A stretch of 64,000 nucleotides of DNA, from IMG/VR virus record IMGVR_UViG_3300010885_076238, positions 1 to 64,000 of that record. The stretch is one strand, 5' to 3'. The translations under genes were made by a program, and so were the position numbers. Shown piece after piece: positions 10,427 through 37,713 of this stretch (the first letter of the stretch is position 1; each line of letters opens with the position of its first letter). The notes beneath the pieces were generated by a model. That model saw nothing but the letters and a program-made list of their open reading frames with translations. It did no database searches and was not told the DNA's origin.

Positions 10427-11188
10427 TCAATTGTGTTTTCTTTTGTAAAATTTTACATGAATATCGATCCAGGCCTTATATCTGGATATTCTTGTGTGTC
10501 CGCTTTCATCTCCAAATTTTGAATTTGGCCTTCCATTAGAGCTGGAAACAAATGAATTAATTCCAGCTAATTTTCCATCAATAAATAAGCCACCTCCACT
10601 ATCCCCATGGGCAATTAGAAATTCCAAAGAAGTTGGGTTATTTTTACTCATATCACAAAACAAAATTGAATCTGTAACAAGCATTATCTTATTACTTCCT
10701 GCTCTTTTTTTATCATCACTTTTATGACTTCCGCTTTGTCCTGTTCCGGTCAAACCGTACCCAGCGATTCCGCAAATCTTATTATGTTCATCTTCTTTTT
10801 CATAGAGAATTGGGTAAAAATCCATCTCAATTTTTTCTTCAACATAGCATAATGCTAAATCTCCTGAACTCATCGTTTTGTTTTCGTCAAAATCTGGGTT
10901 TACTATCACCTCTTTTATTGTGTATTTTTTTTCTTTTATTATAAAATAAGGCTCTTCCATGCAATTGAGGACGTGTGCAGCAGATAAAATCCAATGCTCA
11001 GAAATTACAACGCCAGAACCAGAAGCAATGACTTTTTCATTCTTGAGCCGTCCTGATACTTTAACGACACATTTATATTTTTCTCCATATTGTATATAAT
11101 TTGAGTCAGGAACATCTGGCCTTATTGTTCCGCCATATAAATTACTACCAAATAATAAAGAAAAAATTAAAATTGTATTTTTAATCAT
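10427..11188 (-). CDS. Secreted trypsin-like (S1) serine protease
   Basis: Signal peptide; ILSAAHV, GDLAL, GDSGGGL triad motifs; AAGGAG SD. Confidence 0.9.
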   Translation of the reverse strand: MIKNTILIFSLLFGSNLYGGTIRPDVPDSNYIQYGEKYKCVVKVSGRLKNEKVIASGSGVVISEHWILSAAHVLNCMEEPYFIIKEKKYTIKEVIVNPDFDENKTMSSGDLALCYVEEKIEMDFYPILYEKEDEHNKICGIAGYGLTGTGQSGSHKSDDKKRAGSNKIMLVTDSILFCDMSKNNPTSLEFLIAHGDSGGGLFIDGKLAGINSFVSSSNGRPNSKFGDESGHTRISRYKAWIDIHVKFYKRKHN

Positions 11189-11289
11189 AACACTCCTTTA
11201 TGTTAAAATCCTTGCTTATATTTAGTCTTTTAATACATAGATATGTAAAAAGGAGAAAATATGATTTTTTCATCTAAAAGGTTGGCAAA

Positions 11290-11565
11290 ATGAAAAATAA
11301 AAGCGATCTTCCATTTGAAGAATTAAAAAAAGACAATGTTTTTATTCGCAAGTTTTCTGAAAATATCGACTCTCAGGAATTACATTGGCACAAAGATAGA
11401 GAAGATAGAATTGTCACCCCATTAAAAGAAACAGATTGGCTATTTCAAAGAGACAACCAACTCCCAGAGCCAATTATCGAAGGATTAAAAATAAAAGCAG
11501 GCGAATGGCATAGGGTTATAAAAGGAACTGGGGATTTAGAAATAAAGGTTAATAAATGTTATTGA
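11290..11565 (+). CDS. Conserved small phage protein, cupin-like
   Basis: ELHWHKDREDR and WHRVIKGTGDL motifs. Confidence 0.6.
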   Translation: MKNKSDLPFEELKKDNVFIRKFSENIDSQELHWHKDREDRIVTPLKETDWLFQRDNQLPEPIIEGLKIKAGEWHRVIKGTGDLEIKVNKCY

Positions 11566-12404
11566 CTTTATTTGTTCTTGCTTTTGGCAAGCCAAAACCT
11601 TTTCACTCTGTTATAATCAAAAATTGGAAAAAAATCCCAGATGTTAAGTTTGTATTAATTACAAATTATAGTGAATGTTGGCAAGAATTAGTGCAAGATC
11701 AGAAGCAATTTAAAATTGTTCAAATATCAATTGAATCTTTTTTTTCTTATTTTTTTAAATTTTTAGATTGTGATAATTTTAATAATTTTAGTGAAAAGTA
11801 TGGCAGTTTGTTTGATATTAAACGACATCCAATAAGTGGTTGGCTTGCTTGTACTTTAAGGCCTTGTCTATGTAGATTTATAAAGCCAGAAACTCTTTGG
11901 TGGGGATGGATCGACTGGGATGTTTTTATAGATAAAAAGAGTATTTCAGAATCACTAAATAGTAGTTCTTTTGATGCTTTTTACTTTCCAAAACAAGGTT
12001 GCCAATGGGAGCAATTCAAGGTTTTTAGATCTAATCTTCCGATAGACGAAATTTATCTAAAGACTCTTAATGAAAATCATTCAAAAAATATTTATTTGGG
12101 TCAACCCTTAGATGTTCATGTTATTTATAAAATTAGAAGTGAAGGTTTGTTTTCTCTTGATGATTCTTCTATAGAAGAATTTGCTGTTCATTGGGAATAT
12201 ACAAATAAACATAATTTGCCACATGTTCAAAAAAACGTACTACTAGACAGTAGTTATTGTAATTTATTAGATGAGAACAATACTTGTATTAAGTTTTTTA
12301 TGGCAGACATTCAAGGTAAAAAATATGGTCAAAATGAAGTGGATTTAATATTTGATAAAATTAATAATGATGGTTATTTTATTTTTAATTATAATAAAGA
12401 TTAA
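11556..12404 (+). CDS. Glycosyltransferase-like hypothetical protein
   Basis: WWGWIDWDVF DxD-like motif, VKFVLITN; glyco-gene context. Confidence 0.5.
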   Translation: MLLTLFVLAFGKPKPFHSVIIKNWKKIPDVKFVLITNYSECWQELVQDQKQFKIVQISIESFFSYFFKFLDCDNFNNFSEKYGSLFDIKRHPISGWLACTLRPCLCRFIKPETLWWGWIDWDVFIDKKSISESLNSSSFDAFYFPKQGCQWEQFKVFRSNLPIDEIYLKTLNENHSKNIYLGQPLDVHVIYKIRSEGLFSLDDSSIEEFAVHWEYTNKHNLPHVQKNVLLDSSYCNLLDENNTCIKFFMADIQGKKYGQNEVDLIFDKINNDGYFIFNYNKD

Positions 12405-12454
12405 ATAACCTCCCATTTTAGAATTGCTTCTGGATCACTCAATCAAGCCAAAAG

Positions 12455-12547
12455 AACCGTAGGAACGTCGGGAATGGACCTGTGAAGACCTGAGAGCAAC
12501 AGAGGCTGAATCAGGAAGCCCAATCCCTTTAAGGGCTTTGTAGTTCG
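12455..12547 (+). mobile_element. Orphan IS200/IS605 TnpB right-end / omega-RNA-like remnant
   Basis: AACCGTAGGAAC..CGGGAAT, CCTGTG..GA...TGAATCAGGAAGCCCAATCCCTTT..GGG..GTAGTTC pattern. Vestigial TVGTSG and QEAQSL* frames like TnpB C-termini. No tnpB ORF nearby. Confidence 0.65.
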
Positions 12548-12559
12548 TTTCTGATCGGA

Positions 12560-13330
12560 TTAAGGGTAGTATTCATTGGTGTTATAAGTAATCAAATTAT
12601 TATTAATTAAATGTTCAATTATATTATGATAGTCGTTTTCTATTCCAATATTTTTAATGACTTGATTAAAAAATGGCACCCTATCCTCAGAATGTCCAGA
12701 GCCAATATGTCTTAAAAATTGTGAAGGATATTCTTCAAACATCCAATCATCAATAACTGAAATCTTATTAATAAAATTGTTTAGATTGATGTACAACGAA
12801 TTTTGTTCCCAATTATGTAATAAATTATTTCTCGGATTATCGGTTTCAAACCATGTTTTAAACATCTCCCTACTACTAGAGTTGTTTTTAAATATATAAA
12901 AACCCGAGCAAGGCAATACCGAACTCCAGGGTTTGTCATTTAAGAATATTAGAGTAGCTTCATCAATTGAAACGCCATTGACTACTTTGGAATTTGCCAG
13001 ATAATTAGAAATACTTAAATTAATATCATAAAATATGCAATCACTATCGATATAGACTACATAATCATATTGGGGGTATTCATCAATAATTTTAATTGAT
13101 GATAATAATTTAGACCAGGCACAATATCTTAATTCATTTTTGGAAGAAAAACAATTATTGATAGGGTATTCATTTTCTAATCCAGGTCTTAAGTATAAAA
13201 AATCATAATTCATTTTTTTTGAATATGAATAATTTATTGCCGCGACCAAAGAATTATAATTTGAATTATTTAATATATTTGATAATCCCCTATTATCTGA
13301 CATTGAAATTAATATTTTTTTACTATTCAT
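12560..13330 (-). CDS. Galactosyl/xylosyltransferase-like protein (GT34, GMA12/MNN10-like)
   Basis: YVVYIDSDCIF, CSGFYIF, WEQNSL. Confidence 0.7.
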   Translation of the reverse strand: MNSKKILISMSDNRGLSNILNNSNYNSLVAAINYSYSKKMNYDFLYLRPGLENEYPINNCFSSKNELRYCAWSKLLSSIKIIDEYPQYDYVVYIDSDCIFYDINLSISNYLANSKVVNGVSIDEATLIFLNDKPWSSVLPCSGFYIFKNNSSSREMFKTWFETDNPRNNLLHNWEQNSLYINLNNFINKISVIDDWMFEEYPSQFLRHIGSGHSEDRVPFFNQVIKNIGIENDYHNIIEHLINNNLITYNTNEYYP

Positions 13331-13418
13331 TTTTCCCCACTTTTTACATATTTATATGTATTTGTGTGAATTTATTAATATAAAATCTTTTATAGGCTTG
13401 CCATAACTATATAACCAT

Positions 13419-13973
13419 GTGAAAGTTTACACTCCAAATAAAATAGATAATCCCAAGGTTATCCAAGCAATTTCTGCTTGGGGAGATATTCCCAATATTC
13501 TTCTAGACATAATTGAAAGATTCAACATTTCAAGAAGAAAATGCTTAGAATTTGGCGTTGAATTTGGCTATTCCACATCTGCATTGGCGAATTATTTTGA
13601 TCAAGTTTTAGGAGTAGACACTTTTGAGGGAGATGCTCATAGCGGACACAAAACAGATCATTTTGAAACAACTAAAAATAATCTGTTAGAATTCAAAAAT
13701 ATTAAACTAATTAAATCTCCGTATCAAGAATTTATTAAAAATAATAATGATTTTTATGATTTTGTACACATAGACATTGTGCACAACTATTTGGAAACTT
13801 TTGAGTGCGGAGATTGGTCTATAAATCATTCAAATTGTGTAATTTTTCATGATACGGAATCTTTTCCTGAAGTTAAAAAAGCCGTAGAAGACTTACAAAT
13901 CAAGTATAATTTAGAAGCTTTTAATTATGAAAATTCACATGGATTAGGAATTTTAGTTGGAAAATCTATATAA
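13419..13973 (+). CDS. Class I SAM-dependent methyltransferase (Methyltransf_24-like)
   Basis: CLEFGVEFGYST, GVDTF, FVHIDIVH, IFHD. Confidence 0.85.
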   Translation: MKVYTPNKIDNPKVIQAISAWGDIPNILLDIIERFNISRRKCLEFGVEFGYSTSALANYFDQVLGVDTFEGDAHSGHKTDHFETTKNNLLEFKNIKLIKSPYQEFIKNNNDFYDFVHIDIVHNYLETFECGDWSINHSNCVIFHDTESFPEVKKAVEDLQIKYNLEAFNYENSHGLGILVGKSI

Positions 13974-13991
13974 AATTATAAGAGGTGTTTT

Positions 13992-14591
13992 ATGAAATTT
14001 AAAGATTTTATTAATAAGAAAGAATCGTCCATGCATTTGGCCTCAGAAGTCATTGTTAGTAAAAATTTACAGTATCATATAGACAATAAAATTCCTCTTT
14101 CTGAAAATATTTTTCGTATTTATAGCAAAGCTTATTTTGATTTGATTAATGAAGCAAGAGATTTGTACGATAGAGATTTGCTTGAAGTTACCGACGAAGA
14201 CGCAGAATTATTAGAAACTGATCTTGGCAAGACGGCAGAATACAATGGAAAATTAGTTCATTTAGACGCTCCGAGACCAATAAAAGAAAAGCTAAATGAA
14301 GCTGACGTTGGTGGCAAAAAGGTAAAATTAAATAAGCCAATGAGAACTCCAGGTGGACCTAAGAAATTTAAGGTCTACGTAAAATCCGGAGACAGGGTAA
14401 AGTTGGTAAGATTTGGTGATTCTAAAAAATCAGGTCTTTCAATTAAAAATAATAATCCAAAAAGAGCAAAAAGCTTTAGAGCTAGACACAAATGCTCAGA
14501 GAAAAAAGACAGAACCACTCCTGGTTACTGGTCTTGTAATGTTTCGCGTTATGCAAAATCTTTAGGACTTAAAAGTGATCGTCCTTGGTAA
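13992..14591 (+). CDS. Conserved phage protein (KVKLNKP...SFRARHKC...YWSC family)
   Basis: Motifs familiar from T4-like and large phages; GAGGTG SD. Confidence 0.7.
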   Translation: MKFKDFINKKESSMHLASEVIVSKNLQYHIDNKIPLSENIFRIYSKAYFDLINEARDLYDRDLLEVTDEDAELLETDLGKTAEYNGKLVHLDAPRPIKEKLNEADVGGKKVKLNKPMRTPGGPKKFKVYVKSGDRVKLVRFGDSKKSGLSIKNNNPKRAKSFRARHKCSEKKDRTTPGYWSCNVSRYAKSLGLKSDRPW

Positions 14592-37567: not shown

Positions 37568-37641
37568 GGGCCATTAACTCAGCTGGTTAGAGTGTCAAAC
37601 TCATAATTTGAAAGTCCTTGGTTCGAATCCAAGATGGCCCA
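37568..37641 (+). tRNA. tRNA-Ile2 (anticodon CAT, lysidine-modified type)
   Basis: Cloverleaf: acceptor GGGCCAT/ATGGCCC, anticodon stem TCAAA/TTTGA with loop CTCATAA, GGTTCGAATCC T-arm, A73, no encoded CCA. C4:G69 and C5:G68 present; no initiator features. Confidence 0.9.
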
Positions 37642-37713
37642 CTTCAGTCACTTTTGATTCCTCTACTTTTATCAAAATGAACTTCTCTGACTTCTAATTT
37701 TTTCACTTAGATA

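What the first reader, a model, noticed from the sequence alone, without database searches (positions are those of the whole stretch)
12455..12559. Orphan TnpB omega-RNA-like scaffold with no nuclease gene
Seen: the 155-bp gap between convergent genes contains AACCGTAGGAAC-TCGGGAAT, a CCTG...CAGG pairing, GAAGCCCAATCCCTTT..GGG and GTAGTTC, with vestigial TVGTSG and QEAQSL* frames. Established: IS200/IS605 tnpB 3' ends encode the omega-RNA scaffold, and the flank after the right end serves as guide. Inference: either a trans-acting guide RNA (guide ~TTTCTGATCGGATTAA, reading antisense into the 3' end of the convergent GT gene) or a decayed remnant used as a terminator. It ends GTTCG rather than the usual TCAC/TCAA, and the terminal hairpin is altered.
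Basis: partly seen in the sequence, partly recalled or inferred. Interest (0 to 1): 0.65.

Follow-up and report, generated by a model that had tools for sequence, protein, structure and literature searches.

The report
Decayed tnpB transposon end in phage
The GC-rich gap between two convergent genes of this freshwater T4-like phage is the broken last tenth of a TnpB insertion sequence that still circulates intact in related phages, so it is a transposon scar and very probably not a working guide RNA.

Summary
Window 12437-12548 (+) is homologous to the right end, which holds the omega-RNA scaffold, of real tnpB elements. A profile of the last 200 nt of ten intact family members hits the 204-kb phage genome once, here (75 bits, E=6.7e-22). 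A covariance model built only from unrelated Clostridia tnpB right ends also hits the window once (22.7 bits, E=5.6e-4).

Intact 1.3-kb copies encode a 389-aa TnpB. They lie in freshwater phage contigs that share genes with this phage. Only the last ~130 nt survive here. There is no left end, no tnpB and no other piece of the element in the record.

Against its nearest intact relative the remnant is 86% identical. It has two 10-nt deletions and keeps 14 of 34 family base pairs. The family fold drops from -43.4 to -3.0 kcal/mol, and the invariant TTCA[C/A] terminus reads TTCGT.

The "guide" is simply the flanking DNA and has no second target in the phage. The best reading is a 5'-truncated, decaying insertion-sequence relic. 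A trans-acting guide RNA is not supported. A terminator role is untested, because no RNA data exist.

The parts
12437..12548 (+). Remnant of the last ~130 nt of a 1.3-kb IS605-family tnpB element: the tnpB 3' coding end plus the right end, i.e. the omega-RNA scaffold. The alignment envelope starts at about 12424.
   Evidence: nhmmer with the RE profile: 12437-12546, 75 bits, E=6.7e-22. The whole-IS profile matches positions 1184-1312 only, E=9e-21. CM R1 hits 12448-12548, 22.7 bits, E=5.6e-4.
12426..12506 (+). Vestigial TnpB C-terminal coding sequence. ASGSLNQAKRTVGTSGMDL*RPESNRG corresponds to AINILNEAKRTVGTTGIACGLGVRPESNQG. It is broken by a stop, a deletion and a later frameshift into ..QEAQSL*.
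   Evidence: tblastn of the 389-aa TnpB of L133 against the whole genome: the only hit with E below 0.1. Frames are shown.
12457..12471 (+). Hairpin 1 of the scaffold, damaged. CCGTAG-GAA-CGTCGG stands in place of CCGTAG-GAA-CTACGG, so 4 of 6 pairs are kept.
   Evidence: The hairpin covaries and is fully paired in all the other relatives examined; one, L141, also carries a mismatch.
12479..12515 (+). Central domain. The outer stem CCTG/CAGG is kept. Two 10-nt deletions remove one arm of each inner stem, so 4 of 18 pairs are kept.
   Evidence: Pairwise alignment with L134 and pair mapping; nhmmer alignment.
12516..12540 (+). Terminal hairpin, degraded. GAAGCCCAATCCC-TTTA-AGGGCTTT replaces CCCAATCCC-TTTA-GGGGTTGGG. 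Six of 10 family pairs are kept. An alternative 6-7 bp stem AAGCCC/GGGCTT with an 11-nt loop is possible.
12541..12548 (+). Position of the transposon terminus. It reads TAGTTCGT where the relatives used for comparison read (T/G/A)TTCA(C/A).
   Evidence: The right-end boundary is fixed by two copies in one genome, L087 and L108, which diverge right after TTCAC.
12549..12564 (+). Would-be guide, meaning the DNA that flanked the right end at insertion. It overlaps the stop codon (12560-12562) and the last codon of the convergent glycosyltransferase gene.
   Evidence: Sequence. No other site in the 204-kb genome matches with 2 or fewer mismatches in 16 nt.
11556..12404 (+). Upstream ORF of 282 aa with no family match. 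It points the same way as the remnant, so the remnant would lie in its 3' UTR.
12560..13330 (-). Convergent ORF of 256 aa with a weak Glyco_transf_34 match (E=8e-6).

Best explanation
An IS200/IS605-family, tnpB-only insertion sequence of about 1.3 kb once inserted just downstream of the glycosyltransferase gene of this freshwater T4-like phage. It carried a left-end hairpin, a 389-aa TnpB and a right end encoding the omega-RNA scaffold. Its right end abutted ...TTCTGATCGG.

A later deletion removed the left end and about 90% of the element. What is left is the last ~130 nt: the codons from just after RuvC-III to the stop, plus the right end. That piece has since picked up about 13 substitutions, two 10-nt deletions and a 1-nt insertion. 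Together these break the reading frame, most of the scaffold's base pairs and the terminal cleavage motif.

It is therefore an immobile, non-coding scar that fills most of the intergenic gap. It is probably transcribed passively as the 3' UTR of the upstream gene. It is fixed in the phage population.

Shown: the homology, the truncation, the damage, and the absence of tnpB and of a left end in the record. Inferred: the order of events, and that the piece is not functional.
For: - Homology is unique and highly significant. The RE profile gives E=6.7e-22 and the whole-IS profile E=9e-21. Each has a single hit in 204 kb, covering only the last ~130 of ~1315 profile positions.
- An independent CM from Clostridia right ends hits once, with the full model length.
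- Intact relatives have TnpB with all three Pfam domains and open frames of 389-414 aa.
- Those relatives sit in phage contigs that share genes at 50-80% aa identity with this genome. The element therefore circulates in this phage group.
- No tnpB is in the genome. PF01385 gives nothing, PF07282 gives only 12.7 bits in a 154-aa ORF with no Pfam family, and tblastn finds only the remnant.
- A left-end profile finds nothing upstream.
- Damage: 79 of 92 aligned bases are identical to L134, and there are two 10-nt deletions. Fourteen of 34 pairs are kept. The family topology scores -3.0 against -43.4 kcal/mol, and the minimum-energy fold no longer forms hairpin 1.
- The gap as a whole folds no better than shuffled sequence (z +0.3 and +0.5).
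- The terminus reads TTCGT, against TTCA[C/A] in the relatives compared.
- Six or seven of about 13-14 substitutions fall in stems and none is compensatory. That is roughly what neutrality predicts, since stems make up about half of the positions.
Against: - The surviving piece coincides roughly with the scaffold-encoding part. The gene-less mini-element in L141 keeps almost the same stretch, which is what retention for RNA function would also look like.
- The island is still 49-55% GC in a ~25% GC neighbourhood, and its substitutions show no AT bias (6 GC>AT against 6 AT>GC by my count). The decay is therefore not old.
- A strain about 2% diverged over 12139-14500 shows no listed difference in 12241-12596. 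About 3 would be expected in the 155-nt gap, so this is weak evidence, P~0.04.
- Some genuine right ends next to intact tnpB score as low as W with CM R1: L099 at 22.7 bits and L089 at 14.3.
- The record is 88% complete, the host is unknown, and no RNA data exist.
Confidence: 0.85

Rival explanations
1. Working orphan omega-RNA. The remnant is transcribed and processed, then loaded in trans by a TnpB (or a nuclease-dead TldR-like relative) supplied by the host or a co-infecting related phage. Its 16-20-nt guide (TTCTGATCGGATTAAG...) would direct cleavage or binding at TAM-flanked copies of the glycosyltransferase 3' end, for example in competitor phages that lack the insertion.
For: - Gene-less elements that encode omega-RNAs needing TnpB in trans are recognised (PATEs; PMC10055086).
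- One with an intact scaffold occurs in related phage contigs (L141, L142, L161).
- Intact TnpB copies of the same lineage circulate in phages related to this one.
- The remnant is co-oriented with the upstream ORF, so it is likely to be transcribed.
- It is unchanged in a ~2%-diverged strain.
Against: - The scaffold keeps only 14 of 34 family pairs and has lost 20 nt of the central domain. Hairpin 1 has two central mismatches.
- The bases next to the guide are changed (TTCGT).
- No TnpB is in the record.
- The guide has no other target in the phage. It equals the insertion flank, as it does in every copy, so it carries no sign of having been selected.
- There is no RNA evidence.
Confidence: 0.05
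2. Exapted relic. The fragment is a transposon scar, but it is kept because its remaining hairpin (AAGCCC-11 nt-GGGCTT followed by UGUAGUUCGUUUCU) ends or stabilises the transcript of the upstream ORF and insulates the two convergent genes.
For: - It fills the only spacer between two convergent ORFs.
- A 6-7 bp GC stem followed by a U-rich stretch is present on the + strand.
- No variation is seen in a diverged strain.
- This reading is compatible with the best explanation and is an addition to it.
Against: - The terminator scan finds no site in the gap. The loop is too long and the U-tract is interrupted.
- The fold is no more stable than shuffled sequence.
- On the minus strand no U-tract follows the hairpin.
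- There are no transcript-end data.
Confidence: 0.12
3. Complete but decayed non-autonomous mini-element (PATE): a left-end hairpin fused to the right end, like the element in L141, rather than a 5'-truncated fragment.
For: - By eye, 12410-12436 (CCTCCCATTTTAGAATTGCTTCTGGAT) can be lined up with the left-end hairpin CCCAGTCCCTTTAGGGGCTGGGAT.
- The distance to the AAAAGAACCG motif is the same as in L141.
Against: - The left-end profile gives no hit there, even at E<=100 with filters off. Its only hit is the right-end hairpin itself.
- The same bases align better with the tnpB coding sequence: ACTCAATGAAGCG against ACTCAATCAAGCC, and tblastn AINILNEAK against ASGSLNQAK.
- blastn-short of 12380-12445 against full elements gives only chance words.
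Confidence: 0.03

Closest known systems
Right end / omega-RNA (reRNA) scaffold of IS200/IS605-family tnpB elements (tnpB-only, IS1341-like organisation)
   Same: There is significant, collinear sequence homology to the last ~130 nt of intact elements. The order of parts is the same: RuvC-III tail codons, hairpin 1 with a GAA loop, the CCTG...CAGG long-range stem, GAAGCC plus the terminal hairpin, then TAGTTC.
   Different: There is no tnpB and no left end. Twenty nt are deleted, 20 of 34 pairs are lost, and the terminus is TTCGT rather than TTCA[C/A].
PATEs (palindrome-associated transposable elements): gene-less IS200/IS605 derivatives that often encode omega-RNAs used in trans (PMC10055086)
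   Same: It is a scaffold-encoding piece without a nuclease gene. A true example of this lineage occurs in related phage contigs L141, L142 and L161.
   Different: A PATE has both ends and is mobilisable. Here no left end is detectable and the right-end cleavage motif is mutated.
TldR / domesticated TnpB-guide RNA pairs (PMC10705468)
   Same: The shared idea is a TnpB-type guide RNA used for something other than transposon homing, including in prophages.
   Different: Those systems keep a TnpB-derived protein gene next to the guide. No such gene is in this 204-kb record.

Membership tests
IS200/IS605 tnpB element right end (omega-RNA-encoding region) | Sequence homology to the 3' end or right end of elements that carry an intact tnpB | tested here: met
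   E=6.7e-22 with the profile of ten intact relatives. E=5.6e-4 with an independent CM. The relatives' TnpB has the HTH_OrfB_IS605, OrfB_IS605 and Cas12f1-like_TNB domains.
Functional omega-RNA | Lies at or overlaps the 3' end of a tnpB gene, or a cognate TnpB is encoded in the same genome | tested here: not met
   PF01385 gives no hit and PF07282 only 12.7 bits. tblastn with the family TnpB finds only the 27-aa vestige. The record is 88% complete and the host is unknown.
Functional omega-RNA | Conserved scaffold secondary structure: hairpin 1, central nested stems, terminal hairpin | tested here: not met
   Fourteen of 34 pairs are kept: 4/6, 4/18 and 6/10. The family topology scores -3.0 against -43.4 kcal/mol. 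The minimum-energy fold of W lacks hairpin 1.
Functional omega-RNA | A discrete processed transcript with a 3' guide | not testable with these tools
   No RNA run holds the phage. Only DNA contigs could be laid on it.
Mobilisable IS200/IS605 element or PATE | Left end with a subterminal hairpin, preceded by the TAM | tested here: not met
   The left-end profile gives no hit upstream of the remnant. The whole-IS profile matches only positions 1184-1312.
Mobilisable IS200/IS605 element or PATE | Right-end terminal cleavage motif (TTCAC or TTCAA in this lineage) | tested here: not met
   W reads TTCGT at 12544-12548. The relatives compared read TTCA[C/A].
Rfam RNA families | A covariance-model hit at the gathering score | tested here: inconclusive
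   W gets no hit, but intact members of the family get none either. Rfam 15 has no model for this scaffold type.
Intrinsic terminator | A GC-rich hairpin with a 3-8 nt loop, followed directly by a U-tract | tested here: not met
   The scan finds no site in 12405-12559. The available stem has an 11-nt loop and an interrupted U-run.

The most novel reading that the evidence does not exclude
A phage keeps a shortened, nuclease-less omega-RNA in the 3' UTR of one of its genes. It borrows TnpB from the intact copies of the same IS lineage that circulate in co-infecting related phages or in the host. The guide is aimed at the empty-site allele of the neighbouring glycosyltransferase locus. This would be a guide-only 'parasite of a parasite', used in competition between phages.
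Probability: 0.04. Interest if true: 0.8.

Novelty: new member of a known kind. Interest (0 to 1): 0.25.

Why it matters
On its own this is an ordinary transposon scar. It explains an odd GC island and removes a candidate "orphan guide RNA".

The side result is worth a little more. One TnpB-only IS lineage of 1.3 kb, with an inferred TAM of TTTAT, is active across freshwater T4-like and jumbo phage contigs. It occurs there in every state of its life cycle: intact copies, a gene-less left-end-plus-scaffold mini-element, and truncated relics. That makes the lineage a convenient natural series for asking how far an omega-RNA scaffold can be trimmed, and whether phage-borne gene-less scaffolds use TnpB in trans.

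Tried and rejected
- **Rfam.** The gathering search and the E<=10 search gave only chance hits. This is uninformative, because intact members also get no hit.
- **tRNA or tmRNA.** None in the gap.
- **Stable structure.** Folding z-scores were +0.3 and +0.5.
- **Second copies in the genome.** None.
- **blastn against the phage and plasmid collections.** No usable match.
- **Exact W-specific 23- and 24-mers in viral contigs.** None.
- **Relatives of the two flanking proteins.** None in viral contigs or phage records, so no syntenic empty site could be found.
- **Host-derived fragment idea.** Dropped once the tnpB homology was clear.
- **psbA as a route to cyanobacterial genomes.** The phage has no psbA. 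Handles were obtained through the Glf gene instead.
- **Left-end vestige upstream (PATE hypothesis).** Not supported.
- **nhmmer hit of 12415-12450 to L097.** It lies on the wrong strand and place and has E=0.04. I treat it as chance.
- **Weak tblastn/nhmmer similarity at G000:146290-146327.** E=0.74 and 9.4, so chance.
- **Guide search.** No second target.
- **RNA evidence.** No RNA run holds the phage. The one X5 contig with insertions at 12473 and 12484 is another copy of the IS family, not this locus.
- **Not done.** Loci L156 and L162, which are contigs of human-gut metagenome assemblies, were left unread. The large protein searches, structure prediction and complex prediction were not needed.

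Full report
**Context.** The window is the first 64 kb of a 204,311-bp IMG/VR virus record, estimated 88% complete. Its subtilase/baseplate-type protein matches T4-like cyanomyoviruses at 31-40% identity. It has no psbA. Public runs that hold it are freshwater metagenomes from three studies, dated 2017 and 2022. The neighbourhood of the finding is a glycan-modification region: UDP-galactopyranose mutase, carbamoyltransferase, a glycosyltransferase and a methyltransferase.

**The observation.** The gap 12405-12559 lies between ORF 11556-12404 (+, 282 aa, no family) and ORF 12560-13330 (-, 256 aa, weak Glyco_transf_34). It is a GC island of 49-55% against about 25% in the flanks.

General tools see nothing in the gap:
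- no Rfam family;
- no tRNA;
- no excess folding stability;
- no terminator call;
- a single copy in the genome;
- no blastn match in the phage or plasmid collections.

**Testing the tnpB idea against real tnpB loci.** I collected 30 loci with strong PF07282 hits from a sample of Clostridia genomes.

- nhmmer with the gap as query found L086:1747-1843, exactly 40 nt downstream of the TnpB zinc ribbon. That places it in the tnpB 3' end and right end. The alignment is collinear (ACCGTAGGAAC..CGGGAAT, CCTGTG.AGA, GAGG, TGAA.CAGGAA.CCC, CTTT.AG, AGTTC; E=0.0026).
- The same architecture recurs in other loci. Two copies in one genome (L087, L108) diverge right after ...TTCAC, which fixes the right-end boundary.
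- RNAalifold on ten such right ends gives hairpin 1, a long-range stem and a terminal hairpin. Compensatory changes occur at 13 of 16 pairs.
- A covariance model built from them, without the window sequence, hits the window once: 12448-12548 (+), full model length, 22.7 bits, E=5.6e-4.
- Held-out genuine right ends score 14-58 bits with this model.

**The close family.**
- A scan of viral contigs for ACCGTAGGAACNNCGGGAAT gave 26 loci.
- A scan for CAGGAAGCCCANTCCCTTTA gave 8 viral and 20 metagenome loci.
- Eleven distinct loci carry an intact lineage whose 3' end reads ...DRDTNAAINILNEAKRTVGTTGIACGLGVRPESNQGQPRSKQEAQSL*.
- The window's frames SLNQAKRTVGTSG, RPESNRG and QEAQSL* are that peptide in broken form.
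- The full element is about 1.3 kb. It begins with a left end carrying the hairpin CCCAGTCCC-TTTA-GGGGCTGGG and is always preceded by TTTATA[C/T], from which I infer a TAM of TTTAT. It then encodes a 389-aa TnpB with all three Pfam domains and ends ...GGGTAGTTCAC.
- Several copies lie in phage contigs of up to 323 kb that share genes at 50-80% amino-acid identity with this genome. The element therefore circulates among relatives of this phage.

**Strength and extent of the homology.**
- A profile of the last 200 nt of ten intact members hits the 204-kb genome once, at 12437-12546 (75 bits, E=6.7e-22).
- A whole-element profile matches only its positions 1184-1312 (E=9e-21).
- tblastn with the family TnpB finds only 12426-12506.
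- A left-end profile finds nothing upstream.
- No tnpB exists elsewhere in the record.

What is left is therefore the last tenth of the element, truncated at its 5' side.

**State of the remnant.** Against L134 it is 79/92 identical, with two 10-nt deletions and a 1-nt insertion.

| Scaffold part | Family pairs kept in the window |
|---|---|
| Hairpin 1 | 4 of 6 |
| Central domain | 4 of 18 |
| Terminal hairpin | 6 of 10 |
| Total | 14 of 34 |

- Forced into the family topology the remnant scores -3.0 kcal/mol, against -43.4 for L134. Its own minimum-energy fold does not form hairpin 1.
- The terminus reads TTCGT. The relatives compared read TTCA[C/A].
- About half of the substitutions fall in stems, which is the neutral expectation. 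None is compensatory.
- I count 6 GC>AT and 6 AT>GC changes from the alignment, so the decay is moderate and not ancient.

**The "guide".** In IS200/IS605 elements the guide is whatever DNA flanks the right end. This is established knowledge, and cites PMC10055086 for the homing model. Here that DNA is TTCTGATCGGATTAAG, which overlaps the stop codon of the glycosyltransferase gene. No other site in the phage matches it with 2 or fewer mismatches. Its antisense relation to the neighbouring gene follows from where the element landed. It is not evidence of function.

**Population data.**
- A second record, L155, is 100% identical over 3.5 kb.
- Contigs from an independent 2022 study show a strain with 50 differences over 12139-14500 but none listed in 12241-12596.
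- The zero count in the 155-nt gap is weakly unexpected (about 3 expected). The quiet stretch also covers the end of the upstream ORF, and the table is truncated, so I give this little weight.
- No RNA run holds the phage.

**What is known.** Gene-less IS200/IS605 derivatives (PATEs) that often encode omega-RNAs and would need TnpB in trans are described in PMC10055086. L141, L142 and L161 carry such a mini-element of this very lineage: the left-end hairpin joined directly to the last ~140 nt, with the scaffold intact. L150 carries an even shorter relic. The window's piece differs from a PATE because it lacks a left end and has a mutated terminus.

**Verdict.** The feature is a 5'-truncated, decaying right-end fragment of a TnpB insertion sequence (confidence 0.85). 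A passive or exapted role in the 3' UTR, or as a terminator, remains possible but is untested. A working trans-acting guide RNA is unlikely (about 5%).

**Left unread.** Loci L156 and L162 were not read because they come from human-gut metagenome assemblies.

Noticed in passing
L141:8290-8476 (also L142 and L161): A gene-less mini-element of the same IS lineage. The TTTATATAT flank and left-end hairpin are joined directly to the last ~140 nt, with the scaffold intact and the end reading TAGTTCAC. It sits at the same locus in viral contigs of 85, 144 and 20 kb. This is a PATE-like omega-RNA module carried by phages.
   Followed up: partly
L126, L131, L133, L134, L149, L152 (for example L133:7653-8960, minus strand): Intact tnpB-only IS copies of about 1.3 kb with a 389-aa TnpB. 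They lie in freshwater phage contigs, one of 323 kb, that share genes at 50-80% aa identity with this phage. The left-end flank is always TTTATA[C/T], from which I infer a TAM of TTTAT.
   Followed up: partly
L150 (Ga0194051_1033168), around 781-830: Another truncated relic of the same element. It keeps only the last ~60 nt (ATCAAGGGCAACC...TAGTTCAC) but is otherwise undamaged.
   Followed up: no
G000:126000-167000 (outside the window): The virus record is compositionally split. The window is about 27-30% GC, while 126-167 kb has 80-nt windows of up to 65-71% GC. This could be a conserved structural module, a foreign island or an assembly chimera.
   Followed up: no
window 13356-13822 and 11098-12377: Strain variants in independent 2022 runs. 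Contigs in X4 and X6 skip 13356-13822, which is most of the methyltransferase-like ORF, with CATTC in between. One X5 contig replaces 11098-12377 with 32 nt.
   Followed up: no
window 12443-12559, minus strand: The reading frame of the glycosyltransferase gene stays open for 39 codons past its TAA stop (SDQKRT...TVLLA*). This is expected by chance in a GC-rich insert, and nothing suggests read-through.
   Followed up: partly
window 37568-37642: A single tRNA-Met (CAT) gene, scoring 70.7 bits against Rfam tRNA.
   Followed up: no
Rfam 15 against L134, L086, L087, L152, L111: Intact tnpB right ends of this scaffold type get no Rfam hit even at E<=0.01. The library lacks a model for them, so an Rfam blank cannot be used to reject omega-RNA candidates of this kind.
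   Followed up: yes
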